Below, piece after piece: positions 14,031 to 47,487 of a DNA stretch of 64,000 nt. Where the stretch lies: assembly GCA_051294905.1 (NCBI GenBank), contig CM119371.1, positions 13,888,001 through 13,952,000 on the forward strand, in the 5' to 3' direction. The DNA is from Botryllus schlosseri. Lineage: Eukaryota. Positions within the stretch are counted from its first letter, which is position 1, and the number at the start of each line of letters is the position of its first letter. A model generated the notes under the pieces. That model was given only the letters and a program-made list of their open reading frames with translations, was not told where the DNA came from and made no database searches. Both the position numbers and the translations under genes were made by a program.

Positions 14031-14034
14031 TCAA

Positions 14035-14641: not shown

Positions 14642-14673
14642 ATACTCAAGTGTCCCCATGCTAATATGTCCAC

Positions 14674-21300: not shown

Positions 21301-21420
21301 TAGATACCTTGTAGACTTCTTTAATAAGAGAGTTTTTTTCCAAATATTTGTACCGTAGTAATGGAGTACTATGAAAAGGAGAAGTACTTATTAATGATCG
21401 TATCTGCCAGCTGCTACTAG

Positions 21421-21720: not shown

Positions 21721-21779
21721 GATTTTTTCTTCCTACTTTTTTGGTTTCATCATTCAAGAGAAACTACTATAAATATTGA

Positions 21780-23020: not shown

Positions 23021-23056
23021 TATGTTAGATCGTGGTATGGTAAACTTGAGGCCTGA

Positions 23057-24664: not shown

Positions 24665-25519
24665 GATCACCAATCACTCGTAAAGAATATATACCGTATA
24701 GGCAAACAAAGATTTGTGCTGTTTAGAAAATAAACATAATTAGATATCAACTAATGCTGAGTCATGAGCAGTCAAATACAGAGATATACATATAGCATAG
24801 TGATAAAAGAACTTGCATTGATAAACTAAAGGTAATCAAATACATTGTTTGATAATATCCAGATTTTTAACCAAGTCACAAGGTTCCGATTCAGTGGATT
24901 CACGAGTCAATATCACTCGTAAAAGTTTCCGGTCGCATTTTCAAGTATATATCAGTACTAATAAACGAAATACTCATAGTGTTGTAACTTTAATATTCTT
25001 CAATATTACAGCAGTGGTGTAGGAGCATATGCTTCCGCCCATGGCTTTCGTTAAAAATGCAGCACAAATTTTCAAATAGTTTCCAATCTTCAAATCTTGT
25101 CGCAATGACTAAAAAAAGGTCATCACCTCACATTTCGCCATCTCAAAGCAGCCTTCCGTCCGTGGCGCAGAGCCGCAAGCCACTGAATCACAGTCAAATA
25201 TAGGTATTGGCCGTCCGAGCGTCCAGTCACGCGAGTCGATGACATTTCAAGATTTGGCACACTGTAGTTGTAGGCTACATAGAAAGGTTGACGTCCCCTA
25301 AACTACATTATTTTATGGCCCCCTATGAATTTTTTATGAACTGAGAAACGATTAATAAATACTTCTTGGCGTTTAAAGTAGCAAGTGAAGAATATCCCGT
25401 ACGATCAACAACGACACGCCATTGACGATTACGATGTCCCATGTTGCGGCAAACATTAACAAGTCTCGCTTTAGGGAATTCCCGGGATAGTTTAGAAGTC
25501 GAAGATCCGTAGCGGTAGA

Positions 25520-25765
25520 GAGAGAGAGAGAGATGATATTCTTTTTCGCCTGCACCATCAAATGCTTGGACTACGGAGTTACGATACGACCGTGCGGTCA
25601 CCTAGTCTGTGCCCCCGTTTTATTCTCTTCCATTCTATCCGTGATTGCTGAGCGCCTCGCAGGATAGCTGCGGATACCAATTTTCAAGTCTTTGGTATGA
25701 CCGGGGATCGAACCAACAACCAACCGATCAAGAAGATGGACGCATCACCATTACACTATCTCGCT
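25520..25765 (-). mobile_element. tRNA-derived SINE with a Meta-SINE-like core
   Basis: A box TAGTGTAATGGT (25759-25748), B box GGTTCGATCCC (25714-25704), then GGTCATACCAAAGACTTGAAAATTGGTA...GGCGCTCAGCA, and (TC)n near the tail. Confidence 0.75.
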
Positions 25766-26518
25766 CGTTAGCGTTTCAGAAAGTCAAGTTCTGCAGACGG
25801 GCTTATAGCGACTAATCCAATATTATTAATAAGTGCAGAATAAAACAAATTTTGTTGAATAATTGTATAGGCCTATAAAAATTGAGGAACTGATCGTATT
25901 TTTGCCTCCTTTTAGCATCGCGCAGGACAGGTGGGTCCTGATTTCGAAGATTACCTTAAGTCTTTTCGACACCTCTCTATCTTTCAATATCTTTCAATAT
26001 CGCAGTTTCGTGGTGTATCGAAATTATGAAATTGATTTGAAAAAAGTCCTACTCCCACTACCATGTACATTGTACATTGTACACACGTCACTAGATGGCG
26101 GGAATAAGTGGAAATACGAGGGATTTCCCTCGGTCGAATCATCATTCATCATCGGTCATGCTTTTCCTCCATGGTTCTGTTGTTCAGTTGAAGCAGTAGA
26201 TTAAGATAAGCAACCTTCTGTTCGTGACAACAACAAGGATGTTACAGTCAAAAGTTGTTCTTGTTCGCACATGTCTCTAACGGCATTATGTCAATTGTGT
26301 CTAGTTGGGTTCTAACTATTTTGTTGGATGAAAGGATTAGCGACCTCATGATGATGAGTTGCTGCACTTATAGAAGATCCCTTTCGGATAAGGCCTATAC
26401 TTGGAAATATATTGAGTATACGCCTATTACACTGGAAAAAAACGAAAATTCATTATGGTAGGTGAGAACGATTTTATGGTACATTAGGGACGGTGAGCTC
26501 GAAGATCGCATTGGTTTC

Positions 26519-28627
26519 GGCGCTTCTTCGTTATACGATCAGAGAGAGTGAGTGCTCCCCATGGCACCTATGAACAATGTTCCCATTGAACATGATACAA
26601 TGTGACGTGTTTCACATGATATCAAGCTGTGCTGCCCCTGAACTCGATATTTTTTTCTACGCAGGCGACCTGGGTTCGATTCTCGCCAGTACCCTCTTTC
26701 TGTGAGTCGCTGCTGAGAGATCTGGTGATGGGCATGGAGATTCAAGCAAATGAGAAGCAGCAAGGATTAGAGTATGAATGACGATAACCAAAATACTTAT
26801 TTTTATATTCAATGAACACAGTGCGAAAGTGATTTTACTCGTATTTCGCATAGTCATTATGCTGTAAAGATACATTAGCGTCGTATTGGAAGTTCGGCAT
26901 TGCTCACACGATCGCTAGTTATGTCGGCTGATTAATTAAACTAATTAAATTCAGTGATTCAATCACACAATATGGTATATATGCAACAATACTGTGACAG
27001 ATAGAGTGACTCGGACTTGAGCCGCTAGTGAATTCTTGAGAGATTGACCTGCGACTAGGAACCTTCTGACTTGGTCACGACCCTGGAAACGGCTAGGAGT
27101 AGTCTTAAGATCAGACACCCACCTGGGCCTAGGCCAGGGGTTCTCAAAGGGTGGGCCATGGCCCACTGGTGGGCCACAGGAGCATTTGAGGTGGGCCACA
27201 GAGCTATTTGGAATATTGTAGAACTAGTGAAAATTTGGGTGTATTTGTTATGTTATTCGCTCAAAAATATATTCATATTATCAAATTATACGTAGGCTAC
27301 CTTACGTTTTTCATCCGACTCTGATGGGACGTAATGGCACGCATGGAGTCACAATCTACAAGTCGAAAATGGGAGGGGAAACGGAGGCTTTTATCCCCCG
27401 GCTACGTCAACCTACGGCTAACGGCAAGTTAGTGCTGAAGTGATCAAGTATTCCAGCAGGCCGTATGCCGTTGAAAGGGGTGCGCATTAAACTCGGACAG
27501 AAGTGTAGTTGATATAGACTTACGGTACCTTGGCAGGTCGTATTATTGTAGTATAAAAATAGCCATAATCGTAATTTATTATCAATTCAACTTCCTATCG
27601 AAGTATACGGCACCACCGCAACGAATCGTAATGTATTAAGGATTTAGAGAAGTGCGTGCATTAATGTTTGGAGTCGGTTTAAAATTTCCGGCCTTGAAAT
27701 CATTGTACATAATGTAAGAATCAAATGAAATGATTGTACCATTGGATTGAATGTTCTGACATCGCCACTTAAGTAGATACAGGACATACTATATGTACAT
27801 TGTACAGCTTGAACATTGAAATATTCTTTCACCAAAGAATTGTTTGAAGCTGGCCCAGCCCCAATCCGCACCACAGTGGAAGTATAACCGCAATCACACA
27901 GTTGATGTGAAGATCAGATTATTGGGTTTCGCGACGTGAGTAGAACAGCGGCCACATTAATGTACACAAAACTTATGCGATCTACCAGGACCGTAACCAA
28001 TTGGGGGAGCTCAAAGAGGCCCAAATTTCTTTGGTCGTTTGTTTGTTGGGGGAAATTTAGTCAACTTGAAAATTTTCGTCGCGCTTCGTACGATTTCATC
28101 GCTTTGACGGTCTACATTTGTAATGATCAGAAAGAGATAAATGCGCAGATTTTAGAGAAATAGGCATATCGGCGCCAGCGATGACCACGCCTTGGACGGG
28201 ACTATAACTCTAGGATAAGGGGTGGGCCACAGAACATTTTCAAACCGGAAAATGGGCCATTGGCAAAGGACGGCTGAGAACCCCTGGCCTAGGCGATGTA
28301 AAGAGGACGCAGGCATACTGAATGAAAGTAAAAGAAGATAATATAAAGTGCCAAGTGACAGAAGGCTAAATCAAGTCGTGGTCCGGTAAATGGCGAGGGC
28401 TGACTAGTATTCGTTCAGCAGAAATTGCTTGTATTTCGACTTAAATGTTGACATGCTCGACGACTGTACGATAGCCGGTGAGATACTGTTCCACGCTTCC
28501 GAGTTCAGGGGCAGCACAGCTTGATATCATGTGAAACACGTCACATTGTATCATGTTCAATGGGAACATTGTTTATAGGTACCATGGGGAGCACTCACTC
28601 TCTCTGATCGTATAACGAAGAAGCGCC
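26519..28627. mobile_element. Non-autonomous element with ~128-bp TIRs and 8-bp TSD (Merlin- or MULE-like, uncertain)
   Basis: TIRs begin GGCGCTTCTTCGTTATACG (26519-26646 and ~28500-28627). TSD TTGGTTTC (26511-26518, 28628-28635). Empty site near 50688. Confidence 0.85.
27135..28286. mobile_element. Charlie-type hAT non-autonomous element nested in a LINE 3' fragment
   Basis: TIRs CAGGGGTTCTCA and TGAGAACCCCTG. Perfect TSD GCCTAGGC. Other copies of the LINE module show a single GCCTAGGC. Confidence 0.9.
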
Positions 28628-29400
28628 TTGGTTTCTGCCAGGGTTGTAAACAAGTCACAAGGCTCCGAGTCAGGGGTCCATCTCACTTTTATAGTTTTGA
28701 AGGGTCGGAAAGCGTGTTAAAGTTGATCCCACTAATCATCGGTAATGAGATAAGTGTCATTTGACTCTTTCTGTAGCTTAAGTGAGGGGGGTGTTAATTG
28801 ACGTAATCTGACAGAATATTGTCTCTAAATGATAATTTTCCTGAAAAAACTAACTATTGCTTTATCGGTGCACTACCTACCACCGTTTCCAGTCTGGCAG
28901 ACTATGAAAGAGTGCAATATGACATGAGCCTATAAAAAGCAAGCAAAGTCATTACAAGGCTGTGTCTCACTCGAGGTAGAGTACTAACAATCCTGCAAAG
29001 TTGAATTCAATTTGGTATTACTAGGTGACACCAGCGTATCAATAACAATCGAGACTTGTGTGGGATGAAGCGATTTATTTGATACTGATCACTTGATGAT
29101 TTGAGAATGACTGGTAGATTTCCCTTCGAATCACTAGTCAATCCTCATTTCTAAAACGTTGGGTCAGGTTGAGTCATTTTTGCAAACTGACTCGAGTCAA
29201 GTCATGACTTAAGTCACCACAACACTGATTAATATTAATGTATTTGTTTACTTGTAGTGTATGAATGCGGGTAACTCTATCAACATAAATGCTTTGTATG
29301 TATTCTGACTTCATATGATACAATATCCTTTAATTTATAATCATGTTTACTTTCAGAACAATACTAATCTCCATATATCGCGTACGAGTGATTGGTGATC

Positions 29401-31019
29401 ATGGTGCAGGTTGTTCGTCTAGATGTGGAGAAACGAGCACTGAAGATGGTGGAGGAATTATATCGAATGAAGAAAGATAAGGATCATTGTGATTTCATAG
29501 TTCAAGTCGAAAATGATGTCTATCACACCCACAAAAATGTATTGTCGGCTGGTTCGGATTATTTCCAAGCCATGTTGAAGAATGATACAAAAGGGAGTCG
29601 CGAAGGAAGAGTTGTTTTAAAAGATGTTGATTCCAACTGCGTGAAAAATTGCATCGATTCTATATATTCCAGTAAGTTTGAGATTCCTGATGGAAAAATA
29701 ATTGAACTTCTTCACGTCGTAGTCATGATGCAGTTGGAAGATGTAAAGAATGCTGTATCCAATATTTTGGAGGAATCAATTACTGTTGAGAATTACTTCT
29801 CTACAAGAAATGTTGGTGATATTTATGGACTAGTCAATGTCTCTTATAGATGCACAATATTTTTACAACAGAATATTATGGAAATCGCAAACCAAGCTGG
29901 ATTTGGAAGCATGGAAGAAAATGACTTTATTAGCGTTTTGAAGTCGACAGCAACGGAATTATGGGAAGAAGAAAAAGTAGAGTTATCGCTCAAGTGGATC
30001 GAGGGATGTGAAACTTTTAAAAATATTTGTATGAATGTCTCGAATCGATTGACTTCTATAGAATATCTCCGACATTTTTGCAACATCTGGAAACTCACCC
30101 CATCATCAGAAATGACTGCAAGTCACACGAGCTGATCAGAAATCATGTTATTGGAGGGTCAGATGAAGCTGTAAATCAAAATAAATCATTAATTCTTTTT
30201 GATTGGGAAGGAGATTGCATCCGATCCTTTAATCCGATATCTGAGAAAACAAGTAAGTTACAAAATGCCAAGTTTACGCATTTTCAAGGATTTGAAACGA
30301 TTTTACTAGACTCGTATATTTACATTTTCTGCATAAATAATTCAGTTCATCGACTCAATTTTCAAAGAAAAAATTCAGAATGGCAAAAGATGGAAGGAAT
30401 GATTTGAGACCATGGGCAGTTACCTTGCTCTGTGTCATTGTCCGGATCCATATTTGTCATTGGAGGAAGTTATGGCACAGAAACAAATTATGTCGAAAGA
30501 TTTGACCCTGCAGTAAATCAATGGTTTCAACTGCAAAACAAAAGTACAGCAACTAGCGATGCATGTCTTGTAGCATTAAATGATTCCGTCTACTGTATCG
30601 GAGGTGTGCAAAATGGTTTCGCAGTTTCCTTACTCTGCAAATTTACTCAATCTTCATCAGAGTGGGTTGACCTGAAACCAGTGAAATATCCTGTGGCTGT
30701 TAATCGCGGCGGTGTTGTTGCAGTTGATCAGGAGATAATTGTGATCGGTGGCTGGAATGATTATGAGACTATCAATAACGTAGAGTGTTACAATGTAAAC
30801 TCAGATCGGTGGACTTCATTGTCATGGACATATACATATCGTGATTTAGCTACTGCAGCTTACGTAACCGGCAAATGGATTTTTGTAGTAGACAATACTG
30901 GCGACTCTATTGATATTGAGAAATATGATTTATCAAGCCACAAATGGCATAACGTTAATTTGAAATCACATGAATATCTCAGGGTTTGCGGGTTCGCAAA
31001 GGTGAATGTATTTGTATAG
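29401..31019 (+). pseudogene. BTB-BACK-Kelch gene C1 with a -1 frameshift and a nonsense codon
   Basis: One base shorter than C2 at ~30012-30025. TGA at 30405-30407 replaces the Cys of ICDHG. Otherwise collinear with the paralogs. Confidence 0.9.
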
Positions 31020-31454
31020 TCTCAGAGGTTGTCTAATTAGCCAACTGTATTACTACAGTACGAGTCAAAGTATCGCCGTAATCAGAGGTGGTCAGTAATG
31101 AGGTCATTTTACTTTTTCAAAGTACTCAAGTATTTTTCCTCTATTTCTAGTATGAACTCAAGTAGATCTACTGTTTCGATTCTTCCACTTTATCGTATTT
31201 TGTGACTTACTTACTTTTTGCTATTCACAGTTTGTAAATTGGAAGTATTGAGTAATAGAGAGAGAGTTCGACTGAAATTAAGGAACTCTTTTCTCTGAGT
31301 ACCAGCAATTATTTAACTATCATAAAATTTGAGGAATGTCCAGAATCTTGGACGTGCTCTGCACGAAATAGAAATGAAGTGACGAGTATGTTTTCATGGA
31401 AGTATCGGCCAATATAATTTGGGTTGCGTGGTTTCTTTCATACCGTATTGCCGA

Positions 31455-31835
31455 CAATGTTCCCTCTAATTCAGTGGTTCCCAACCTTTTTCCACTCACC
31501 TCCCCCTTTCTAAGCTCCACAGTCCACACTGATCATCGGCCCCCTTGAATATTGGGAACGGAAAGATCGGCAAGCAAACTGTAATAAAAAAAGACAACTT
31601 TTCGGCTCGGTCTCGAAATTACATTTTCGTGAGTTGACTAAAAAAAGGTCATTTGTCTCCAATATAGTCGTTTGAACGCACCATCCCCCCTAGATCGCCC
31701 ACGTCGAATTCTCTATGAGACTGTGCGCACTCACCGACTCACTGCGCGGTTCCTTGGACAACAGTGTGTAACAACTAAAAGAAATGTCATCACTTCGGCT
31801 TTTTTTGTGAGCAGCTTAGATTAGAGGGAACATTG
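31455..31835. mobile_element. hAT MITE (Tip100-like termini)
   Basis: TIRs CAATGTTCCCTCTAAT and ATTAGAGGGAACATTG. Flanks ATTGCCGA and ATTGCCGC match at 7/8. Confidence 0.75.
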
Positions 31836-32189
31836 ATTGCCGCCCATAGGACATGTTTCATCACAGTCAATATGGCTCAAAATAAATGTTTGGAACTATC
31901 ATATCGTAATCTGGCCTGAAACTTTTTTATCGTAATCTAGCATTCCAGCCGCGCAGACTGTGTTCAAATATGGAGAAAGTGGTACTTTAGTTTTAAGCGT
32001 TTGAGCGTCAACCGCCATTGAAACTGCCTGGACGTAATGCATAAAATATATTCCATCTTTTTAAAAATTTATAGTTGTATTTCTCTTCATGCTTTCTGCA
32101 CGGTAACGTTACAGAGAGATATCCTGATTAATCCGAGTTCTGTAGTCATGAGCAGATGCACGTGGAAGTTTAAAACTAGGTGCGCTAAG

Positions 32190-33493
32190 CAGAGGTGGTC
32201 AGTAACGAAGTATTCTACTTTTTCGAAGTACTCAAGTAGTTTTCCTCTACTTCTGGTACTTACTCAAGTAGATCTGATTTTCGCTACTTCTACTTCTACT
32301 TCCTAATATTTTGTGATCTACTTACTTACTTTTCGCTATTTTCAGTTTGTCAAGTAGAAGTAGTTCAATCTTCCAATCAGGAAGATAGCCTAAGGAATTT
32401 CGGAGCGGTTTTCACGGAGTATTAACATTGAATTTTCATAAAAGTATATTAAAGCACTGGATTTTCGTCGCGCTTCGCGCGCAGTGGATACGGAGTGACC
32501 ATGCAGTATGATTTCACGAAAGTATCGGTGAATATAATTTAGGTGGAGGGTTGGCGTGGTTCCGTTCACGCCACATTGTCGCCCTTCACCCATATGAAAT
32601 AATTCATCACAGTATGTATGGCTCATCATAACCTTTGAAGCTGATGTTTCGCAATCTAGCATTTTCTTGTCATATCGTAATCTAGCATATATGTCCATGG
32701 CGTGTCCTAATCTGGAAGAGTGGACTTTGACTTTTTATTTATTTATTTTAGAGCTGTTTTAGCATACCACCTTTGAAACTTTCTTGACTAAAAACATGAA
32801 ATACATATTCTAATTTTAGAAGTAGTATTTATATTTCACTTTCAATTCCCAGTATCATATACTTTGAGTTATAATTAATATCAGTTCTTTTGTCCGAATA
32901 ACATACATGTTGAAGTATAAAAGCAAGTGCAGTAATGCCTTTAATTTGTGGAAATAAAGCTACACAATATGGCATTTTTACGGTCCACCATATTTTTTAT
33001 TAACGTTTACTAATCGCGCAAAGTGTTTACACCGTATCCTATACAACTTCTCCATATTGCTCTTCGACTAAACTACGGGCCTTATAATATGGGGGATGGC
33101 GCCATACCATGCTATTTTCCAAAACGTGTTGTTTGAGAAAACAGAAGATTAGTATCGCATTTCCTTATCAATACTATCATTTTCATCCCATGATGTGGAC
33201 AAATGCTTATGCTATCGAAAATTGGATACCTGCTGATATGCATCAATATGAATCAAGCTCGTCACCTATCACATATAGCTCAATTTGCACCTTTTTATAA
33301 TCCATCCAATCAGGATCGTTTTCACAACTACTTACTTACTTGAGTACTTTTAAAGTCAGTCAATTCTACTTCTACTTCAAGTAGTTTTAGGTTGCTCATG
33401 AAAGAAGTACTTCTACTTGTACTTGAGTAGATTTTTTCGTCGCTACTTCTACTTTTACTTGAGTAGCTTTCTTGACTACTTTGACCACCTCTG
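32190..33493. mobile_element. hAT non-autonomous element with TACTT/AAGTA subterminal arrays
   Basis: TIRs CAGAGGTGGTCA and TGACCACCTCTG. Perfect TSD GCGCTAAG. A related left-end fragment starts at 31083. Confidence 0.9.
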
Positions 33494-34342
33494 GCGCTAA
33501 GCTAACTCAAGTTATCTTAAGCCAGCTCTCAACGCCGTTCGCGGGGCTGAGTTTAAAGCTTTTAACAGCCCATGAGAGCGTATTTAAAACTACTGCTCAC
33601 AATCACTTACTTACTTGGCACTTACAAATTTTTGAGATGTTATATTTATGGGATTTGGACTGATGTTCTTTCAACCACACAGCTGGTGTGAGGACTGAGA
33701 TTCTCAAAATTCTAGATTCGCTTATCATGGAATCAAGAGAAAGATTCACACCAAGCTATCATGAGTCAACATGTCAAATCCTATACACTTTCTTTACTTA
33801 TGTTTTCCATCACATGGAGGAGTGCCCATATGGTCATACCATCTGGTCTGATTTTAGTACTGTCAATAAATCAGGATTAATTTTATTTGAATTTGGATCC
33901 ACTGATAGGTTAGGACCATCTGGTCCTACTAGGCTGCCTAAAGTCAATTTTGGCTGAACATATGGTTATTTGGATTTAGCCACACTGGTGGAGGATTACC
34001 CGTCTACTAGTCACACCGGCTGGTGTAACATTATTGTTAACCAAAATTCTGAATGTTGGTACCGTACTATGGATATTTTAATTTAGCTGCATTGATGGCC
34101 GACTCTAGTGATTTGCCAAGTGTATCCTTAGCTATATAAGGGACTTTTCCTCAATAGTACCGTATTTATACATATACCGAGTTTTATGTATCCGAGTGTC
34201 GTTTAATCAGTAAAATACTGTTGTTACGCAGTATGATTAAATTTATGTGATACTGGTAGATATTCGTACTTACTTTTGAAACATTATGCCTGTTCTTCTA
34301 TTTTATATAGAATCTTCCTAATCAGTGATCACTTCAGCTATC

Positions 34343-35953
34343 ATGGGTTCACTTGTATGTTTGGATGTTGAAAAGCACGCTGCGTCTGTGTTGGCTGAAC
34401 TGCATCGAATGAAGCAAGATAACGATCACTGTGACTTCATAATTCAAGTCGAAGAGGATGTCTATCATACACACAAAAATGTATTGTCGGCTGGTTCCGC
34501 ATATTTCAAAGCCATGCTCGAACATGACACAAAAGAGAGTCGTGAAGGAAGAGTTGTTCTCAAAGATGTGGATTCTCAGTGCGTAAAAAATTGCATCGAT
34601 TTCATATATTCCGCGAAATTTTACATTCCTGATGGAAAAATCATTGGGCTGCTTCACATCGCAATCATGATGCAGTTGGAAGATGTAAAGCAAGCTGTCT
34701 CCCGTCTTTTGGCGGAATCAATTACCGTTGAGAATTACTTCTCGACGAGAAATGTTGGTGATATTTACGGACTGACGGATGTTTCTTCGAGATGCAGAAT
34801 ATTTTTACAAGAACACATCATGGAAATTGCAAACGAAGATGGATTTGGAAGCGTTGAAAAAAATGACCTTCTCAGTCTTATGAAGTCGGGAAAACCAAAA
34901 TTATGCGAAGAAGAAAAACTTACGTTATCCCTCAAGTGGATCGACAAATGCCAAAGTAAAAGCGACTATTTGCATGAATATCTCGAAGTAATCAAGCTTG
35001 ATCAAATCTCGCCGGTATATTTGCAACACATTTTAGAAACTCATCCCCGTATAAGCAATGATCTTGAGTTGTACAAGTTAATCAATCAACATTTTCTGAA
35101 ATCTTTGGTCAAGGCAAAAGAAGATAATGATAAATTGATAATTCTTTTTGATATTACCAGGAATCGTATCCGAACCCTTGATCCAGTAACCGAGAAAGTA
35201 GAGAAGTTCCATGATGAAAAGTTCAAGCATTTGAAGCATTTTGAGACGATATCTCTCGACTCGTACATTTATGTTTTATGTCGCAAAAAATCTGTTCACC
35301 GACTCGATTGCCGAAGTAAAAATTCAAAATGGGAAAGAATGAAAGATATGATTTTTAACCATGGAAGATATCCTCGCTCTGTTTCTTGGTCAGGGTCAAT
35401 ATTTGTTGTTGGAGGAACTTCTCCCAAAGCAACAAATGATGTGGAAACATTTACTTCTTCCTTAAATGAATGGTTTCAATTAGAAAACAAACCTACAGCA
35501 ATTTGCAATGCAAGTCTTGTATCATTGGGTGATTCCATTTATTGTATTGGAGGCATAGTAGATGATGTCGAAGTTTCTTCATTCTGCAGATTCACTCCAT
35601 TCTCATCAGAGTGGGTTGATCTCGAGCCGATGAGATATTCTGTGTCGAATAGTGGTGTCGTTGCAGTTGACCAAAAGATATTTGTGATGGGTGGTTGCAG
35701 CGGAGGGATCGGAGTCAACTATGTATCATGTTACGATGTTACTTCAACTCAGTGGACTTTATTGTCGTCTATGATTTCTGGTGGTAGCATTCTTTCTGCT
35801 CATCACATTGATAACTGGATTTTTGCAGTAGGATACGGAGATATCTCTAATGCTATTAAAAAGTATGATGTCTTAAAAGACAAATGGGTTATAGTGAAAC
35901 CAAAAGTTAATCAATATTTTGGAATTTATGAATCCACATTTGTAAAAATATAG
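34343..35953 (+). CDS. BTB-BACK-Kelch protein A2, intact, 536 aa, chimeric
   Basis: Uninterrupted ORF with BTB, BACK and Kelch motifs. The 5' half matches A3 and the 3' half matches A1. Confidence 0.95.
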   Translation: MGSLVCLDVEKHAASVLAELHRMKQDNDHCDFIIQVEEDVYHTHKNVLSAGSAYFKAMLEHDTKESREGRVVLKDVDSQCVKNCIDFIYSAKFYIPDGKIIGLLHIAIMMQLEDVKQAVSRLLAESITVENYFSTRNVGDIYGLTDVSSRCRIFLQEHIMEIANEDGFGSVEKNDLLSLMKSGKPKLCEEEKLTLSLKWIDKCQSKSDYLHEYLEVIKLDQISPVYLQHILETHPRISNDLELYKLINQHFLKSLVKAKEDNDKLIILFDITRNRIRTLDPVTEKVEKFHDEKFKHLKHFETISLDSYIYVLCRKKSVHRLDCRSKNSKWERMKDMIFNHGRYPRSVSWSGSIFVVGGTSPKATNDVETFTSSLNEWFQLENKPTAICNASLVSLGDSIYCIGGIVDDVEVSSFCRFTPFSSEWVDLEPMRYSVSNSGVVAVDQKIFVMGGCSGGIGVNYVSCYDVTSTQWTLLSSMISGGSILSAHHIDNWIFAVGYGDISNAIKKYDVLKDKWVIVKPKVNQYFGIYESTFVKI

Positions 35954-38900
35954 ACTGTACTGATCGAAGACATGATTACAAGTATTTCTTATTACAACTT
36001 AAATTATGCAGTTGTTCGTTCTATCCGTGCCACAATTGATCATGCTATTTCCATCATAATTACATTGAAAATTGTGCATTTCATTGATTGCAATTTAGTG
36101 TCTTGAACTAGTTAGTCATGTGGCTTTTTATCAAACATGTTTACGTTTAACTTCATAATTCAATTCGTCAGAACTTCTCACTTTAGCTTTTCAGATTCCG
36201 TCGAAATTAACCTAGTTTGGGGTGAATTTGTATAATTTATAAATTGAATTAAAATGCTGTCAAGAAATTTTGTGGAAATGTACTTCATAACCGGGCCTAC
36301 CAAAGTGCAACCGGGTTACATTGGAAATAATTTGACTGACTTTGTTCTTTCCTCAATAAGTGTATTGTAAATGATAATTGATGACTTGAAAATTCGATTC
36401 CACAATTGCTGCATGGTCGATATCAATAGTGGACAACTTACTGAGTACTGTGTGCTGAATTATTTTTTAGACTCATATTCAGGCATTTTAGTTTTACATA
36501 GCCCAAATCACCCCGCTCATGAAAATTTCAATGAGAGTGAATTGTCTTGTTTCCTTGTTTTGATGCATTCGGTGTTTGTTAACCGATTGGCACAGGCAAG
36601 TTTTTTGAAAAATTCTGCTTCACTTAACAAAACTGAAAAACACGACTTCAACGGGGTGCGAAACCAACAAGCAATGCATCGTTTGATTCAGAATGTCATC
36701 GCATAACCAACTACGCCACGAAGCAAGACGAGTGCAGTCAACCGCGCGTGTATACAATCCAGAAGACGAGAAAACTTTCTAAACATGTACATGTTTTGCT
36801 TACTCCCTTATAGAGTCCACAACGTATACCTAGTGCGAAAAATCACGTGCTATTCACTGTCATTACAACCCTGCGTTCCAGTTATGATATTAGCCAGCAA
36901 TCATGACAGTGTCATTATATGTGCTCCGTATATGCAGAAATTTACCTGTCTACCAACTGGTCTACGCAATAATTTGTTTTGAAACATTAAAATTGGTTCA
37001 TATTGGCACATACATTAATATCTGACAATTTTCGATTCAGGCGAATGACAGCCTTACGCCATTGACAATCAATAATGAGGATTCAGAATGTAGTTTTATG
37101 AAAATAATCAGTGAATTTCTAGATCAGAACCCATTTATCCGAGGCATTCATTTTTATGACACATTTATTTACAATCTCTTATTTCCAGGTGTCTCTCCTG
37201 AAAGACGAGGAAGATGTCAAAGTTCGAACAATGAAGGTTGCATCCCACGTGTGTCAATAACCGTAAGTAGTCGTAGAAATAGGAGAGTTCAGAACAAAGT
37301 CATCCATCTCGGAAATTGCAATAGAATTATTGAGAAATATTTTATTGTTGGTGTAATAGCCCATCCTCAGGACCAACGTATTTTGAAACGTTTCGGTTGG
37401 TAAACATCCAAAAAATCAAAACTCAAATGACTTGGTTCTGATCACAATTGTGATTTTAGATTAGAACTCCTACATTCAGTGCTGTACTTGGAAAAAGCGG
37501 TTCATGAATGTGTTTTAGATTCGTCCTCTATGTGCAGTTAGGTGCAAATCACTCATAAATTCGGTCTCGACTCATCCATAATATGTAGGGTGATTTTTTG
37601 ACCTGAAAACGAAAGATTTTGACCTAAAAAATCAAAATTTTTGACACTTTTTTACCTAAAATAACTTTTGACCTCACAATAGGCCTATGCAAATTTGGTG
37701 TTTTCGCACACAATGTTAAGATTGCACCACTTATCTTCATTTCTGGTTGGGAGTGTATGTCCTTACAAAGTAGTTTGGCCCGATAAACGTTTTTGACTTG
37801 AAAACTGACAAATTTTTACATGAAAAATCTTATATTTTAACAAAATCTGGCTGTATGAAGAATTCCAGTATCACATGACGTATTATGGTAGAAATAATTA
37901 AAATTTGTTGTAATACATCAAATCAAATGATATTTCCGTCATATCTCATGACGGTTCGCACAATGAACCATAGTAAAAGTGGGTAGTAAAAGTAAAAGAG
38001 GGTCGAGAACTGCAATAGGTTGGAAAGCACTGATTTAAATGATGTCATCACAGCCTGAATCATAAACGATATTCGCACTACAATATCAACTGATCAGTTG
38101 GTATCTGTCAAACACATGATGTCTGTCTGACGGACGTACCTTTGGCTTAAAGATCAATAAATTCTTATTTTCTGTTTACACCCAATCAATAATTCTGTTT
38201 TCGAGTATTTGCCTTTTTGTGCCACCATCTTTAACTAGATTAATACTATATGTAAGAAGAAGTCTCAATGCATTGGGTGACTGCAAAGTTAGAATTTGGA
38301 TTGTTTCCAAATTGATGTATTCTTTGTCATCACAGGCAAGGATTTCTTTTTCATCATGTTCAATCAAGCTACAAGTTTCCAGCAAGGAAGCTTCCCCAAT
38401 TGTCATTCAAGATGAGTTTTATCCGGCTGCATATTTTGCGAGGCACAAATACGATTGACATCGACCTTCTATGCACGTAACAATTATCAACTCGGAAGCG
38501 GATGAGGTCAGCAACATCAGCATCCCAGATTTTTCGTCATTTATTGAGTTTTTTAGTTGTGCCCGTTCGTTAGCCTGGCTGCCGAATCTACAAAGTAGGA
38601 CAGATTCACAAAAAGGAGGACATGTAGGCATCATCAGAGGATATTTTCGATTTCCTGAAAAAGGAGCACAAACTTGAACGACATACTCAAATGGTCATAT
38701 TTTTAATGCCGGTACTTAAAAATTGCTATACAAAACTACTTACTTTTGAAACTTGGATTTGGTATAGTAGAAAGTAGTTTTGAGACACTGTGTGAAAGTT
38801 TCCAAATCGAGCAGCTGTGATACCGATCTTATAACCATGGGGATGTGTTGTTTTATGCGATCCAACATCCTAACGTTTGTCGCTCGATTCGGGAAATTTC

Positions 38901-39655
38901 ACACAATGTAAATTACGGCCCGTTACCGTGGTGGATTTTCATTTCATTGCTGTTGCGATAGCCCGACCTCAAGGCCCATGCAGTTCAAAACAGAAAGTTT
39001 TTTACTGTGCGTTGTGTACTTAAACCACGGTATATTTACAAAATCGATATATAATTTAATCGGAGCGCATTTCCAGCTAACATGGTTATGACGCTTTCAG
39101 CATTGTACAATTGAATACTGAAATGAACCCGGTTATTTTCGGCTGACACTCGTCAGGGGTAATCGTCAGCAACTAGTCGAGAATTGGAAAGAACATGGTA
39201 TATCAACAATCGTATCACAAAATAGGACGTCACCAGCATGAAATTTCGAATGAGTGAGCGTTCAATGTACTATTTGTAGGTGGTACACGAACTCCTTTTG
39301 TTGAGTTTTGGTTCCAAGTGTATTTTGATAAAGGTCAACTCCAAGGCACACAAATGGCAGTGTGAACGGCCCCTCCTGACGACACCACATCTGTCGTCTC
39401 GATAATTATTCGCAAAAATCGGTTTATCCAACAGATGTTTACCGATGCACACGAGTACATCTCTGTGACATCACATCATAAATACAGAATAAGTAAATCA
39501 AAGTGAAATACCCCCAATTTTCTTCACGAAATGAGAGTATTCGTAACATTTTTGTGTTCAAGGTGGAACAACTGCTAAATTTCGTTTTTTTTTTGTCCAA
39601 GTCACATTTAAGAAGTTGAGTGAAGAAGTGAATTCTATTTTTTAGCGGTGTGATA

Positions 39656-41198
39656 CAGAGTTGGATCAATTGTAATTTGTAATGTAATGTATTGTAATTA
39701 ATTACATTTTTTCAATGTAATTGTAATGTAATTGTAATTGAAGCATTTTTATTTTGTGTAATTGTAATTTGACAAAAATTTTGGTCAATTACAATTTCAA
39801 TTACATTAAATTGCTATTGAGACCTGACAAGCACATCATAAAATAATTGACTTATTATGCATTCTCTTTCAATGTCGACAAGGAATTTGGTGGATCCATT
39901 CGCGGAAGCCCTTGACTGCGCCCTTGCGGGCGAAGTTTTTTTATTTTCACCGCTATGCTGGCCTCGACTGCCATTGTATACAATTATTAGATTACTAACC
40001 AACGGATGGATTCGCAACACGTGACTCACGATTGAATACGCCGAGCAGCGAACTGCTGAGCCGGCTAAAAGCAGCAGAATTGATAGTCCCATAGCTGGCG
40101 ATCCAAGCGTCGAAATTTGATATGTATGGTCCTAATCGAAAGCTAGTGTCGCACTGATTCCGCAATAAAAGTATATTTCCAGGCAATGGTACCATCCCAA
40201 AATAGTCGTGAAAGTCTGGGAATCGGCATTGTTCTGAACAATCGCTGGGCGTAATAGGTCATTGTTGTGGTCATGCTGCTGCGGCGCTCTCACCTTTCAG
40301 AACAGTCGGCCTTGAAAGGCTATTTTAGAGCAGTTAAATTGCCCTGACGAGATTTTAATTTGTATTTTCGGAACTAGTGCATCAATAGCTTACGATAAAG
40401 ACCAGATGCATCAAATTTGGACGCTTGGATCGCCAGCTCTAGGACTACAAAGTTTGCTGCTTTTAGACGGCTCTGCAGTCTACGTTTGTCGGTTTCATTC
40501 ATCCGTGACTCACATCTTGCGCATCTATCCGTGGGTTGGCAATCTACAATACGATCTCAGGTCACGATGCTGCATCGTTACTTCGGCTGGCTAACTAACC
40601 AGACCACTGGATATTATATAACGTCTTATCTGACAAAGCACAGTTTTGGTTTTACTCCTCATCCTAATTCCTACGTCCCTCGATAAAAATAATATTATTT
40701 CTTTAATTATATACTATATGCGCAAATCCAACACGTGCACATATTATAATACTTTTTTCAACGACATACTGCACCCTATCCCTAATCCTAACCCATAGGA
40801 AATTAGGTAAATAACATTTTACATTTCCAATTACGTGAGCCATAATTACCAAGCATACAAAACACGCTTATATTACGTCACATTGACATCTTACATAGCA
40901 TACTATGTATGCACATAAACGCATTTATTACTACACAATCTGAACTAGACTTGAATTGTTGTTAATTACGATGCTACAGTTGTCAAGGAGCACGGTTGAA
41001 TTTATGATTATTCAATTGCATGTTCAACAGCAGCAATTGTAATTGTAATTGTAATGTAATTGAAGCATGCATGGAGTAATTGTAATTGTAATTTGATATT
41101 TTTAGAATGGAGTAATTGTAATTGTAATGTAATTGAAACATGCATGAAAGTAATTGTAATTGTAATTGAACTGAAATAATGTAATTGATCCAACTCTG
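39656..41198. mobile_element. hAT non-autonomous element with (GTAATT)n subterminal arrays
   Basis: TIRs CAGAGTTGGATCAATT and AATTGATCCAACTCTG. Perfect TSD GTGTGATA. Empty site GTGTAATA near 20861. Confidence 0.9.
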
Positions 41199-41355
41199 GT
41201 GTGATATGAGATTTTCTTTCAGGCTTTGTCTCCTGCTGAAAGACAAGATCTCAATATCAGGACTTTCAGGAATCATGATGACTGCAGCTGCAGGTGAGCC
41301 ACTATGAAGCACTGTAACATATCCAGAGTCCGCAACAGAGTAACTAATATATAGC

Positions 41356-41543
41356 AAACGTAAGACCGTGATAGCTTTCACACCCTATTTATCGTCCACT
41401 TGTATGAATATAACTTTATTAGTTACACGAGCTTTCGGAGCTCTGCTCCTTCATCAGGCTCCGAAAGCATGTGTAACTAATAAAGTTATATTCATACAAG
41501 TGGACGTTAAATAGGGTGTGAAAGCTATCAAGGTCTTACGTTT
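41356..41543. mobile_element. Penelope-like pseudo-LTR fragment with inverted duplication (188-bp hairpin)
   Basis: Long palindrome centred on CTGATGAAGGAGCAGAGCTCCGAAAGCTC followed by AATAAA (minus strand). TAATATATAGCAAAC is duplicated at 41345-41359 and 42071-42085. Absent in the sister copy (~21000). Confidence 0.65.
41429..41457 (-). ncRNA. Minimal hammerhead ribozyme core
   Basis: CUGAUGA-A, stem II GGAGC/GCUCC, GAAA, palindromic AGCU stem III, C at the cleavage position. Stem I is weak in this copy. Confidence 0.55.
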
Positions 41544-41580
41544 ATATATATCGTCTGCTATCGGCGCAACAAAGTATTAA

Positions 41581-42069
41581 AGGGGCACTGTACTCTAAAA
41601 ATGATGTGGTCTCAAATTGAAGGGCAAAACGAAAGAAAAATTTTGACAGCAGCCGTTTTCTTCAGAACGCCACCGTAATGGAGCTGTAATGAATTGAAAT
41701 TTCCATAGTTGCAGCACGCTCCAGCAGTCACGCAGAGATCGAACTATATATAGTTGTCAGCCGATGTTATGAAGGAAATAGAATACACTAGGCCCGATTT
41801 TGACATAAATCTCCTGACTGGACATCTTCCGTTGAACGCGGTATCTAAACCACCTTGGCGTGTACGACATATATCCTTCATAACATCGGCTGACAACTAT
41901 GGAAAGTTCGATCTCTGCGTGACTGCTGGAGCGTGCTGCAACTATGGAAATTTCAATTCATTACAGCTCCATTACGGTGGCGTTCTGAAGAAAACGGCTG
42001 CTGCCAAAATTTTTCTTTCGTTTTGCCCTTCAATCTGAGACCACATCATTTTTAGAGTGCAGTGCCCCT
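41581..42069. mobile_element. Palindromic MITE with TTAA TSD (Kolobok-like termini)
   Basis: TTAA-AGGGGCACTG...CAGTGCCCCT-TTAA. The arms are complementary over almost the whole 489 bp. Confidence 0.85.
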
Positions 42070-42479
42070 TTAATATATAGCAAACATTCTGTCCAAAACA
42101 TTGAAAATTTCAGTGTCAAATTAGTCAATTCAAATCCCATGCTATCTCTTGTAACGTTTTGCGCTCGTTTCCATCTGCACACTCAATATATTCACCCAAC
42201 GTACGCCTACATCCGGCATGTAGGCCTACTCATTTCTAAGCTTACAAAGAAATAATGCCATGAATATTGCTCTATGGTTTCCAATAAATTCGGGTATAAA
42301 AAATAAGCACTCCACCCTACACTTTTACCCGCATCTTACCAAGCCGCCTTTCAAATTTAATGGATACCTTGTTGACTTCTTTAACAAGAGATTTTTTCCA
42401 AACATTTGTACCGTAGTAATTGAGTACTATGAAAAAGGAGAAGTACTTCATTAATGATCGTATCTGCCAGTTGCTACAA

Positions 42480-42790
42480 CTGTCAGACAAGATAGCGTAA
42501 TGGTGGAACGTCCGGCTGCTTGATTGGTAGATCGATCCCTGGCCAGGTCATGCCAATGACCTTATTGGTAACACTGCAACTGCTATTCATGACTCCCCCA
42601 CTTGGCGCTCAACATTACCTGGATAGCATGCAGGGGTGGTGCAAGACTTCGAAAGCCTTACAGGGGTATATCTGCACATTCCTTGTCCAGCGGCATATAC
42701 ACATCACTGACTCATGGTATGCATATGTACAGATTGTGTGTGTGTATATCATGTGTCGGTGGCAAAAACATACATTCTATTCTGTTTGAT
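42480..42790 (+). mobile_element. Old tRNA-derived SINE (sister copy of 21421-21720)
   Basis: A box TAGCGTAATGGT and collinear homology with 21421-21720. Confidence 0.5.
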
Positions 42791-43344
42791 TTTTTCATCC
42801 TACTTATTTGGTTTCAACATTCAAGAGAAACTACGATAAATATTGAGTTGGCTCAAAATCATGTCGAACCATCTCATCAATGTGTTGTACATTTTTCACA
42901 GCTACTTCAGGGGAATACATCATGTTGTAGCTTCACCCTCGGGTAAGGATTGCATTTCTTCATTAACACTGTTCTGGATATACTGTTTGAGTGTATCTTC
43001 GGTTTAGGTTGAAAACTCCGGAGTGGATCATTTCCGGGCGTCTCACTCTACCTTTGACCTGACTTGGAATGAAGGACCAACTCATGTTACACGACTCTGT
43101 CTCAAGCTTCAGTGACATTTTCCAGCAACACCGTGTTAATTTATATTCATATCACATGAAACAAATTGACAATAACTGTCAGCGACTACTGAATGAGTTC
43201 ATTACGAGTGACCAATTTTGACAAGACTCGGCTACGTTATATCGAATAAGTTGTTCTGGAATGCTCTGAACACACAGTGATTGATTTTTGCAGTCCGAAA
43301 TCTCTATTGTCCTGGATTTATATCTATATATATATACATTTTAG

Positions 43345-43800
43345 TCATCATCATTGGTTTATTAGCAATTTGTATCAGTTCAATACACCACAAAAATGCG
43401 ATACAATGAAAAGATAGGAAGATGTCAAAGCGACTTGGAGTTGTCTATGGAATCAGACACCCTTGGCCTAGGCGATGTAAAGAGGAGGCATGCACACTGA
43501 ATAGAAGTAAAGAAGATAGTATAGAATAAAAGAAAGCGACAAGAAATAGGGCGGCATGTCATGGAAAGCGAGATCGATAGGTCAGTCGTGATCCGGTAAT
43601 CTTGAGGATAGACCGTATTCATTCAGTAGTTATAGCTTTTATTTCGACTTGAATGTGGACATGCTCGTTGACTGTCGGATGGCCGGCGGGATATGCTTGA
43701 AGGGGCAAAAGGTTTGTAGTATGCCAAATTTGGCGTGCTAGCTTGCCTAATAATTTCGTCGAATAACGAGTAGTAAAATTTTTGGACAACGCTAACACAC
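43345..43800 (-). mobile_element. L2/Crack-like LINE 3' end (ORF2 C-terminus, 3' UTR and tail)
   Basis: Minus strand encodes IPPAIRQSTSMSTFKSK*KL*LLNEY, typical of CR1/L2-group ORF2 ends, and terminates in AATAAACCAA(TGA)n. Confidence 0.7.
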
Positions 43801-44798
43801 TTCTCCAATTAATTTGTAATAATACGACACAGAATTACCAGTTCAAAAGCCGCCTGGATTGCTTAGGTGTTAAGTTCTAGGTCTTGGTAGAAGAGTCAGA
43901 ATTTCCAATGTCTATATTCGTCACTATCCAACGAGCATATAAACGAAGGTGAGTACATTACAGAATCAGACTTGGACAACTAGAAAAATTAGAATTTCAG
44001 CTATGAAGTTTTTTTTTCCAAATTAGATCGAGATATGAATTATAGCCACACACTTTCTTTTATATTAGCATTAATGAATTCAAGAAAACTTGGACATCGA
44101 ATCAATTTCGGTTAAAATCAAATCAGATCGCTCTAATAAGCATGAGAATAGCAAATGTCAGTAGAGCGAGCTTGACTCATTTTGCACTATACAGTTTTCC
44201 TATAGCGTTTACTGGAAAACCAGAAATTAGATTAGCATAAGTGCAAAGAAAGATGTGACGATTTAGAAATAGATTACCGGCATTTCGCTCTAATTTAGTC
44301 TAAATAGAAAACTATAATTATCTAGCAGTCCAAATTTGTAAACAGCACGTGGTATAAATACAAAGTCGAGGCACACGAGGAAATGATGTTTGGCAGTAAT
44401 TACTAGTCGTATACGAATGAGAGTCAGAGGATACCAAAGTAAATACATGTATATAACAGTCATAATATCTGATGTCCCGGCAGTGAGGCTGCATTTCATT
44501 GAAAAACCAGTTTCATTCAATTTAGTATTACAATTTAAACATTTCAATACACCTCAAGACTGTGATACAATGAAAAGATAGGAAGGTGTCATAACGACTT
44601 GGAGTAATCTATGAAATCAGACAACCATCTGGCCTAGGCGATGTAGAAAGGAGGCATGCACATTGAATGCAAAGTAAAAGAAGATAAGGTAGTATAAAAG
44701 GACAGGCGACAAAAAGAGGTGGCATGTGTCGGAAGGTAAGACCGATATGCGAGGTAGTGGTCCCGGAAACTTGAAGAAATTCTAGTTGATACACTGAT

Positions 44799-46412: not shown

Positions 46413-47230
46413 GATCACCAATCACCCGTAAAGGATCTATAGGCTAATAAAGATTTGTGCTGTTAAGAAAATAAACATAATTAGATATCAACTAATGTTG
46501 AGTCATGAGCAGTCGAATACAGAGATAGACATATAGCATAGTGATAAACTAAAGGTAATCAACCACATTGATTAATAATATCCAGATTTGTAACCAAGTC
46601 ACAAGGTTCCGATTCAGTGGATTCACAAGTTAATATCACTTGTAACAGTTTGCGGTCGCATTTTCAAGTATATATCAGTACTAATAGACGAAATACCCAT
46701 AGTGTTGTAACTTTAATATTCTTTAATATTACAGCAGTGGTGTAGGAGCATATGCTTCCGCTCATGGCTTTCGTTAAAAATGCAGCACAAATTTTCAAAT
46801 TGTTTCAAATCTTCAAATCTTGTCACAATGACTAAAAAAGGTCATCACCTCACATTTTGCCATCTCAAAGCAGCCTTCCGCCCGTGGCGCAGAGCCACAA
46901 GCCACTGAATCACAGTCAAATATAGGTATTGGCCTTCCGAGCGTCGAGTCACGCGAGTTGATGACATTTGGCAGACTGTATAGTTGTAGGCTACATAGAA
47001 AAGGTTGACGTCCCCTAAACTACATTATTTTATGGCCCCCTATGAATTTTTTATGAACTGGGAAACGATTAATAAATACTTCTTAGCGTTTAAAGTAGCA
47101 AGTGAAGAATATTCCGAACGATCAACAACGACAGGCCATTGATGATTACGATATCCCATATGTTGCGGCAAACATTAAGTCTCGCTTTAGGGAATTCCCG
47201 GGATAGTTTAGAAGTCGAAGATCCGTAGCG

Positions 47231-47234
<4 letters not shown>

Positions 47235-47269
<35 letters not shown>

Positions 47270-47487
47270 TCTTTTTCGCCTGCACCATCAAGATACTTGG
47301 ACTACGGAGTTGCGATACGACCGTGAGGTCACCTAGTCTGTGACTCCGTTTTATTCTCTTCCATTCTATCCGTGATTGCTGAGCGCCTAGCAGGATAGCT
47401 GCGGATACCAATTTTCAAGTCTTTGGTATGACCGGGGATCGAACCCACAACTAACCGATCAAGAAGATGGACGCATCACCATTACAC
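47235..47487 (-). mobile_element. tRNA-derived SINE (sister of 25520-25765), A box split by an insertion
   Basis: B box and core intact, (GA)n expanded. The remainder of the head lies at 49642-49660. Confidence 0.7.

What the first reader, a model, noticed from the sequence alone, without database searches (positions are those of the whole stretch)
34343..35953. Gene A2 is a chimera marking the unequal crossover that duplicated the cluster
A2's upstream DNA (33660-34340) and BTB-BACK half match A3 (56640-58140) through GATAAATTGATAATTCTTTT (~35149). From AACCGAGAAAGTAGAGAAGTTCCATGATGAAAAG (35188) onward, its Kelch half and downstream DNA match A1 (10245 onward). A1's upstream and A3's downstream regions are unique. 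This is the pattern expected if A1-B-C-A3 recombined between A1 and A3 to give A1-B-C-[A3/A1]-B-C-A3. The switch falls at the BACK-propeller boundary, and the chimera is the only A-type copy still intact.
Basis: partly seen in the sequence, partly recalled or inferred. Interest (0 to 1): 0.78.

Follow-up and report, generated by a model that had tools for sequence, protein, structure and literature searches.

The report
Hybrid Kelch gene at a duplication joint
One intact gene in a tandem cluster of ubiquitin-ligase adaptor (BTB-Kelch) genes is a real hybrid of two different gene lineages, sitting exactly where two copies of a ~23-25 kb block meet; this is a textbook product of unequal crossing-over, but the cluster's history is messier than one clean event.

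Summary
A2 (34343-35953) is an intact 536-aa BTB-BACK-Kelch gene. Its upstream DNA and first ~263 codons match one gene lineage (beta: A3, plus A4 and A5 just outside the window). Its last ~260 codons and downstream DNA match another (alpha: A1, plus Z1 and Z2 outside the window).

- **Switch:** there is a single switch at 35131-35167 (max chi-square 162.6, 0 of 10,000 permutations). In the predicted structure it lies on the first propeller strand, just after the BACK helices.
- **Trees:** each half sits in its clade with 100% support. The two clades lie on opposite sides of the deepest split among 39 family members.
- **Not an assembly join:** short-read contigs from two other samples bridge the switch, and a decayed copy of the same hybrid sits on contig C17.

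The layout (alpha, B, C, hybrid, B', C', beta, with one switch) fits unequal crossing-over. It is not a clean A1 x A3 event:
- The BTB part is closest to A4, and Z1 is nearly as close as A1 in the Kelch half.
- Block divergences range from 0.035 to 0.23.
- The C-to-A spacers of the two units do not match.
- A4 and Z2 are also intact.

This is a new example of a known kind, of modest interest.

The parts
34343..35953 (+). A2: intact 536-aa BTB-BACK-Kelch gene, hybrid of a beta-type 5' part and an alpha-type 3' part
   Evidence: ORF and translation; Pfam BTB, BACK and Kelch hits; confident fold, pLDDT 88; half-specific trees at 100% support
33624..35130 (+). Beta-type part: ~720 bp upstream plus BTB and BACK codons 1-263. 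Collinear with A3 (56608-58121) and in part with A4 outside the window
   Evidence: Fixed alpha/beta sites are almost all beta-state up to 35162
35131..35167 (+). Switch interval (residues 263-275). It contains a 14-nt island (35135-35148) identical in A1, A2 and A3 that encodes the first propeller strand
   Evidence: max chi-square between 35165 and 35167; last beta site 35162, first alpha site of the run 35168; identity runs; secondary structure
35168..36859 (+). Alpha-type part: Kelch propeller codons 276-536 plus ~900 bp downstream. Collinear with A1 10225-11892
9384..11013 (+). A1: full alpha-type gene at the left end of unit 1. Frame broken by +4 in an (AT)n tract near 9645
   Evidence: whole gene plus flanks is ~84-85% identical to Z1 and Z2 outside the window
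57326..58965 (+). A3: full beta-type gene at the right end of unit 2. Frame broken by +2 in the same (AT)n tract near 57590
   Evidence: whole gene plus flanks is 83.9% identical to A4 outside the window
10221..35164 (.). Unit 1 of the tandem duplication: A1 3' half, B (23057-24673, minus strand), C (29392-31019, pseudogene), spacer, A2 5' half
   Evidence: collinear BLAST blocks with unit 2; K2P per block
35164..58155 (.). Unit 2: A2 3' half, B' (44799-46421, minus strand), C' (53114-54740, three stops), spacer, A3 5' half
31020..33623 (.). Unit 1 spacer between C and A2. No homology to the unit 2 spacer. Holds a young 1.3-kb repeat at 32186-33494 and an older fragment of a related repeat at 31079-31453
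54742..56607 (.). Unit 2 spacer between C' and A3. Collinear with the spacer of the C17 copy that precedes an A2-type hybrid fragment

Best explanation
A2 is the junction gene of a tandem duplication of a ~20-25 kb block.

**Proposed event.** The ancestral order was alpha gene (A1 lineage), B, C, spacer, beta gene (A3/A4 lineage). The alpha and beta genes were ~70-75% identical and in direct orientation. They misaligned, and an unequal (non-allelic homologous) crossover joined the beta gene's upstream region and BTB-BACK codons, in frame, to the alpha gene's Kelch codons and downstream DNA. The join lies in or next to a short identical stretch that encodes the first propeller strand. The result is alpha, B, C, hybrid, B', C', beta.

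**What is shown.** The hybrid nature, the single switch, its position at the unit boundary, and its presence in other samples.

**What is inferred.**
- The crossover mechanism itself.
- That the hybrid works as a Cul3 substrate adaptor, pairing a beta-type docking and dimerisation module with an alpha-type substrate-binding propeller.
- That selection has kept it open.

**Later events that blurred the picture.**
- Transposon insertions.
- Replacement of the unit 1 spacer.
- Exchange among paralogs, for example in the BTB segment shared with A4.
- A copy of the C-spacer-hybrid stretch moved to contig C17.
- Frameshifts in A1 and A3.
For: - **One switch only.** 153:52 informative sites on the left and 30:192 on the right; chi-square 162.6; 0 of 10,000 permutations.
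- **Trees.** The 5' half sits in the beta clade at 100/99 and the 3' half in the alpha clade at 100/100. A2 is the only one of 39 genes that crosses the deepest split.
- **Collinearity to the right.** Everything right of the switch is collinear with A1's 3' half and ~20 kb beyond it, through B and C.
- **Collinearity to the left.** Everything left of the switch is collinear with A3's upstream region. Through the C17 copy, this extends across a spacer to a C gene.
- **No alpha-type upstream remnant** lies ahead of A2.
- **Orientation and order** fit the duplication product of unequal crossing-over.
- **A 14-nt identity island** lies in the switch interval.
- **Independent samples.** A 511-nt contig from X6 (34714-35224, 14 differences) and a 123-nt contig from X5 (35102-35224) bridge the switch.
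- **A second copy.** C17 carries the same switch at 89-91% identity. It is the only other such copy in the genome.
- **BACK-segment dS fits one age.** A2-A3 0.44±0.12, against B-B' 0.30±0.09 and C-C' 0.39±0.11.
- **ORF retention.** With ~119 substitutions on A2's own branch, only 0.9% of neutral simulations keep the frame open.
Against: - **Unequal divergence.** 5'-half dS to A3 is 0.39±0.06, against 3'-half dS to A1 of 0.16±0.03. Upstream K2P is 0.228, against 0.045-0.10 for most non-coding blocks.
- **BTB segment.** A2 is closer to A4 than to A3. In the upstream region A3 and A4 are closer to each other (87%) than either is to A2 (80-81%).
- **Kelch half.** A1 is not resolved as A2's sister.
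- **Spacers.** The two C-to-A spacers share no homology in the window.
- **C17 copy.** Its C gene groups with C' rather than C (99/98), so at least one arrangement not present today must have existed.
- **Untested predictions.** No unduplicated haplotype or reciprocal product was looked for.
Confidence: 0.68

Rival explanations
1. Two-step history. An older resident beta gene already sat after C. Later its 3' half and downstream DNA were replaced by a copy of A1's 3' half, B and C. This could have happened by template switching or break-induced replication primed in the homologous Kelch region, or by a crossover followed by deletion of the redundant spacer and beta copy.
For: - The beta part is about twice as diverged from A3 as the alpha part is from A1: dS 0.39 against 0.16, and upstream K2P 0.228.
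- The upstream branch pattern places A2 outside A3 plus A4 under a clock.
- Unit homology detected by BLAST stops at the end of C (31020 / 54742), and the spacers do not match.
Against: - BACK-segment dS is compatible with the age of B-B' and C-C'.
- Coding and upstream DNA shared among paralogs is a poor clock here. B-B' third codon positions differ at 0.14 while their flanks differ at 0.045.
- The spacer region is also the fastest-diverging block in the C17 comparison, 75% against 83% for C.
- C17 shows C, spacer, beta upstream and hybrid as one continuous stretch.
- This history needs more events than a single crossover.
Confidence: 0.15
2. Gene conversion. A conventional duplication made a second complete alpha gene at the head of unit 2. 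A beta paralog later overwrote its 5' half and upstream region.
For: - Mosaicism is common in this family. L019, L026 and L005 show significant switches at residues ~342, ~285 and ~306.
- A ~440-bp BTB tract (34424-34862) has 45 of 52 informative sites shared between A2 and A4, which looks like a conversion tract.
Against: - Only one boundary is seen, where a conversion tract should have two.
- No alpha-type upstream sequence remains between C and A2.
- In the C17 copy the beta-type context runs on through the spacer to the C gene.
- A tract of more than 1.5 kb ending exactly where unit homology resumes would be indistinguishable from a crossover and is less parsimonious.
Confidence: 0.12
3. 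Assembly artefact. The hybrid is a mis-join of two haplotypes or paralogs.
For: The region is repetitive, with eight paralogs in 64 kb.
Against: - Contigs from other samples bridge the switch at 96-97% identity, while the next best genomic match is 91%.
- The units differ by 5-20%, far more than the 1-4% seen between samples.
- There are no N runs in the window.
- A diverged second copy of the same hybrid sits on C17.
Confidence: 0.02

Closest known systems
Duplication-type ('anti-Lepore') hybrid genes from unequal crossing-over, such as HBB/HBD anti-Lepore, the CYP11B1/CYP11B2 chimera and red/green opsin hybrids (named from general knowledge, not tested here)
   Same: - Two direct-orientation paralogs flank a duplicated block.
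- The junction gene takes its 5' part from the distal paralog and its 3' part from the proximal one.
- The join is in frame at homologous positions.
   Different: - The parents are only ~70-75% identical and ~25 kb apart, with two other family members between them.
- The event is old (5-20% divergence).
- It has been overprinted by later exchange among paralogs, transposons and a secondary copy.
Chimeric paralogs in tandem recognition-gene clusters that evolve by unequal crossing-over and conversion, such as plant NLR/R-gene clusters or KIR genes (named from general knowledge)
   Same: - A large, fast-evolving tandem family with frequent mosaics.
- Pseudogenes sit beside intact copies.
- The binding domain evolves faster than the scaffold domain.
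   Different: No recognition or immune role is shown for this family. It is a ubiquitin-ligase adaptor architecture, not a receptor.
KLHL/KBTBD-type BTB-BACK-Kelch Cul3 substrate adaptors (KEAP1, KLHL2/3/12/20)
   Same: - Same three-domain architecture by Pfam.
- The best solved relative is KEAP1 at E 2.6e-37.
- A six-blade propeller follows a helical BACK domain in the model.
   Different: - Intronless, and part of a lineage-specific expansion of hundreds of copies.
- Only ~21% identical to the nearest named animal KLHL protein found.
- Cul3 binding and substrates are unknown.

Membership tests
BTB-BACK-Kelch (KLHL-type) adaptor | N-terminal BTB/POZ domain | tested here: met
   PF00651, E 3.9e-20, residues 22-125
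BTB-BACK-Kelch (KLHL-type) adaptor | BACK (IVR) helical domain after BTB | tested here: met
   PF07707, E 1.3e-12, residues 135-231; helices up to residue 258 in the model
BTB-BACK-Kelch (KLHL-type) adaptor | C-terminal six-blade Kelch propeller | tested here: met
   Kelch_1 and related Pfam hits; 25 strands from residue 264 to 535 at pLDDT ~90, which fits six four-stranded blades plus a closing strand; PDB Kelch-domain matches
BTB-BACK-Kelch (KLHL-type) adaptor | Binds Cul3 and recruits substrates for ubiquitination | not testable with these tools
   No complex prediction or assay was run; the function is inferred from the architecture only
Junction gene of an unequal-crossover tandem duplication | Two parental paralogs in direct orientation at the outer ends of the duplicated units | tested here: met
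   A1 (full alpha) and A3 (full beta) are both on the + strand
Junction gene of an unequal-crossover tandem duplication | Single switch at homologous, in-frame positions, with the 5' part from the distal and the 3' part from the proximal paralog lineage | tested here: met
Junction gene of an unequal-crossover tandem duplication | Uninterrupted collinearity of the two units on both sides of the junction | tested here: inconclusive
   The right side is collinear for ~20 kb. On the left side the ~2-kb spacers do not match in the window. The C17 copy shows a continuous C-type gene, spacer, beta upstream and hybrid, but its C gene groups with C'
Junction gene of an unequal-crossover tandem duplication | Both halves equally diverged from their parental copies, and those copies are the nearest relatives | tested here: not met
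   dS 0.39 against 0.16. The BTB part is nearest to A4, and the Kelch half is not resolved between A1 and Z1. Ectopic exchange may explain this, but the simple expectation fails
Junction gene of an unequal-crossover tandem duplication | Unduplicated or reciprocal (deletion) haplotypes exist or existed | not tested

The most novel reading that the evidence does not exclude
The start of the propeller is a preferred and selectable exchange point. On this reading, this hugely expanded, intronless BTB-Kelch family uses unequal crossing-over and conversion to re-pair Cul3-docking and dimerisation modules with substrate-binding propellers. That would be a combinatorial way of making new ligase specificities, like the one seen in variable recognition-gene families. 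A2 would be a retained product that joins the two deepest clades of the family.
Probability: 0.1. Interest if true: 0.6.

Novelty: new member of a known kind. Interest (0 to 1): 0.3.

Why it matters
It is a clean, datable example of how a tandem gene family makes a new intact gene. The hybrid pairs the scaffold half of one lineage with the substrate-binding half of a distant one, and it has stayed open while both flanking parental-position genes carry frameshifts. It also marks the boundary of the duplication and so anchors a reconstruction of how this cluster grew. The mechanism itself is textbook, so the value lies mainly in annotating and understanding this family's expansion. It does not establish a new principle.

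Tried and rejected
- **Assembly join:** rejected by the bridging contigs.
- **RNA evidence:** no indexed RNA run holds the gene. One bulk RNA run gave only 20 partial reads, with about 6% of the run read, so expression stays unknown.
- **Large protein database:** only three unnamed relatives (40-52% identity) and distant Kelch proteins, with no names or context.
- **Exact-protein look-up in public assemblies:** nothing found.
- **Literature:** two searches found no description of this expansion or of such hybrids.
- **Direct homology between the two C-to-A spacers:** none found even with 7-nt words.
- **A single clock-like age for the duplication:** abandoned. Coding and shared upstream DNA diverge faster and more unevenly than unique flanks.
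- **Complex prediction:** not run, because the report makes no binding claim.

Full report
**Setting.** The window is G000:C1:13888001-13952000 of a 495-Mb animal genome. That genome holds hundreds of intronless BTB-BACK-Kelch genes: 547 first-look candidates, of which 81 were scored.

The window has no N runs and eight family members:
- A1: 9384-11013, + strand
- B: 23057-24673, minus strand
- C: 29392-31019, + strand
- A2: 34343-35953, + strand
- B': 44799-46421, minus strand
- C': 53114-54740, + strand
- A3: 57326-58965, + strand
- D: 62273-63889, + strand

I fetched 30 kb to the left and 40 kb to the right of the window. This added further copies, given here in window coordinates:
- Z1: -3235 to -1610, minus strand
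- A4: 65720-67291
- E: 68585-70144
- A5: 71574-73173
- F: a partial copy
- Z2: 87171-88796, minus strand

**The observation.** A three-way alignment with flanks shows the following:
- A2 is 80-94% identical to A3 and 55-84% to A1 up to about 35100.
- It is 84-93% identical to A1 and 62-79% to A3 from about 35140 onward.
- Upstream DNA from 33624 aligns only with A3-type upstream.
- Downstream DNA aligns with A1's downstream and then, block after block, through B/B' and C/C'.

A maximum chi-square test on 427 informative sites places the switch between 35165 and 35167. The chi-square is 162.6, and none of 10,000 permutations exceeded 21.1. Sites fixed between the two lineages change from beta state (last at 35162) to alpha state (first of the run at 35168). 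Because the alignment of 35150-35163 is ambiguous, I give the interval as 35131-35167.

That interval contains a 14-nt island (35135-35148) identical in A1 and A3. It is among their ten longest shared runs but is not the longest.

**Where the switch lies in the protein.** I predicted the fold with AlphaFold2 on a 20-sequence family alignment (mean pLDDT 88). The model has these elements in order:
- the last BACK helix at residues 241-258;
- a low-confidence linker at 258-263;
- the first propeller strand at 264-270.

The switch (residues 263-275) therefore lies at the very start of the propeller. 'BACK-propeller boundary' is a fair description.

**Two lineages.** Looking outside the window changes the picture.
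- A1 is a full member of an alpha lineage with Z1 and Z2, at ~84-85% identity over the gene plus flanks.
- A3 is a full member of a beta lineage with A4 (83.9% over the gene plus flanks) and A5 (80.1% over the gene).
- In trees of 13 and of 39 family members, the 5' half of A2 falls in the beta clade (100/99) and the 3' half in the alpha clade (100/100).
- These clades lie on opposite sides of the deepest split of the sample, and A2 is the only gene that crosses it.

Within each clade, however, A2's sister is not resolved:
- In the BTB segment A2 is nearest to A4 (91.6% against 85.2% to A3; dS 0.18±0.05 against 0.36±0.07).
- In the BACK segment A3 and A4 are equally near.
- In the upstream region A3 and A4 are closer to each other (87.4%) than either is to A2 (80-81%).
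- In the Kelch half A1 (89.7%), Z1 (87.8%) and Z2 (85.2%) form a near star.

Only the long downstream collinearity singles out A1 as the syntenic partner. Only the position after C' singles out A3.

**Is it real DNA?** I laid contigs of three DNA runs and raw reads of one RNA run on 33500-37600.
- A 511-nt contig of run X6, from another study and carrying a different organism label, covers 34714-35224 with 14 differences.
- A 123-nt contig of run X5, from another sample, covers 35102-35224.
- Both bridge the switch. The next best genomic match to this stretch is only 91% identical.

The junction is therefore not an artefact of this assembly. The RNA run gave no usable evidence of expression, and no indexed RNA run holds the gene.

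**The duplication.** Unit 1 (10221-35164) and unit 2 (35164-58155) are collinear apart from insertions. Some of the insertions are young transposons:
- a 3.7-kb element with ~220-bp inverted ends at 14667-18365, 99% identical to at least 30 other copies;
- a 1.3-kb repeat at 32186-33494.

K2P distances between the units range from 0.035 to 0.23:

| Block | K2P |
|---|---|
| Most unique non-coding blocks | 0.045-0.10 |
| B coding sequence | 0.095 |
| C coding sequence | 0.158 |
| A2/A3 5' coding sequence | 0.163 |
| A2/A3 upstream | 0.228 |

Coding DNA is more diverged than its own flanks. For B/B', third codon positions differ at 0.14 while the flanks differ at 0.045, and the differences cluster in BACK and Kelch. 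Sequence shared with other paralogs is therefore a poor clock here, probably because of ectopic exchange, diversifying selection, or both.

**The spacer problem and the C17 copy.** The spacers between C and A2 (31020-33623) and between C' and A3 (54742-56607) share no detectable homology. The single-crossover model does not predict this.

A paralogous stretch on contig C17 helps (C17:259979-265137, reverse strand). In one continuous run it carries:
- a C-type gene;
- a spacer collinear with the unit 2 spacer;
- beta-type upstream DNA;
- a truncated A2-type gene, 89-91% identical to A2 across the same switch.

So a C gene, this spacer and the hybrid were once contiguous, and the present unit 1 spacer is a later replacement. 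However, the C17 C-type gene groups with C' rather than C (99/98). It also shares C'-specific upstream DNA. At least one arrangement no longer present in the window must therefore have existed, such as an extra or recombinant unit.

**Best reading.** The evidence for a duplication junction made by unequal crossing-over between an alpha and a beta paralog is this:
- there is one switch, not two;
- there is collinearity on both sides;
- there is no alpha-type upstream remnant;
- the parents are in direct orientation;
- the join is in frame.

I put this at about 0.68. The rivals are a two-step history (older resident beta gene, later arrival of the alpha-B-C block; 0.15) and gene conversion into a complete alpha gene (0.12). 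Both are kept alive by the unequal divergences. An assembly artefact is effectively excluded.

**Is the hybrid functional?** Several points suggest selection has maintained it:
- A2 keeps all 35 residues that are invariant in the 20-sequence family alignment, which includes A2 itself.
- It folds confidently.
- Pairwise dN/dS is 0.3 for the 5' half and 0.6 for the 3' half.
- It has stayed open over ~0.074 substitutions per site on its own branch. Only 0.9% of neutral simulations do so.

Function as a Cul3 adaptor is inferred from architecture alone.

**Status of the other A-type genes.** A1 (+4) and A3 (+2) are each broken only at the same (AT)n tract. I could not check these with reads. Outside the window, A4 and Z2 are intact.

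**Context.** Mosaic genes are not rare in this family. L019 switches partner clade at about residue 342 (chi-square 105). L026 and L005 show weaker switches at about residues 285 and 306. I picked these from tree conflicts, so they are not an unbiased sample, and their switch points are not all at the domain boundary.

**Verdict.** This is a new example of a well-known kind of event.

Noticed in passing
window 14667-18365: A 3.7-kb element with ~220-bp terminal inverted repeats and two ORFs (15347-16183 and 16418-17653, no Pfam hit). It is 99% identical to at least 30 copies across the genome and is present in unit 1 only. It is probably a very recently active DNA transposon.
   Followed up: partly
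window 5512-8681 (minus strand): Retrotransposon-like ORFs just upstream of A1: a gag-like ORF with a zinc knuckle (7356-8681) and a protease plus reverse-transcriptase ORF (5512-7326).
   Followed up: no
window ~9645 (A1) and ~57590 (A3): Both flanking A-type genes are broken only by expansion of the same (AT)n tract in the BTB domain (+4 and +2). All 16 other copies inspected have the short form.
   Followed up: partly
B/B' 23057-24673 vs 44799-46421 and their flanks: Duplicated coding sequences are more diverged than their unique non-coding flanks (third positions 0.14 against flanks 0.045). The differences are concentrated in BACK and Kelch, while BTB matches the flank rate. This suggests ectopic exchange with other paralogs, diversifying selection, or both.
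   Followed up: partly
L038/L039 (G000:C17:259979-265137): A decayed secondary copy of a C-type gene, spacer and A2-type hybrid on another contig. The hybrid is truncated at both ends: about 540 bp of upstream DNA and 520 bp of 5' coding sequence are missing, and homology stops at A2 position 35737.
   Followed up: yes
L019 (G000:C1:14740646-14742205): Another strongly mosaic family member. The first ~340 codons group with L018 and the rest with L014 (chi-square 105, 0 of 2000 permutations). The gene carries one TGA stop.
   Followed up: partly
window 29392-31019 (C) and 53114-54740 (C'): Both C copies are pseudogenes with different lesions: two 1-nt deletions and a TGA in C, and three stops in C'. 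They therefore decayed independently after the duplication.
   Followed up: partly
window 3868-4077, 22828-23051, 43345-43608, 44526-44777: A short (~210-250 bp) dispersed repeat occurs four times in the window, including downstream of B and B'. It inflates the apparent divergence of that block.
   Followed up: no
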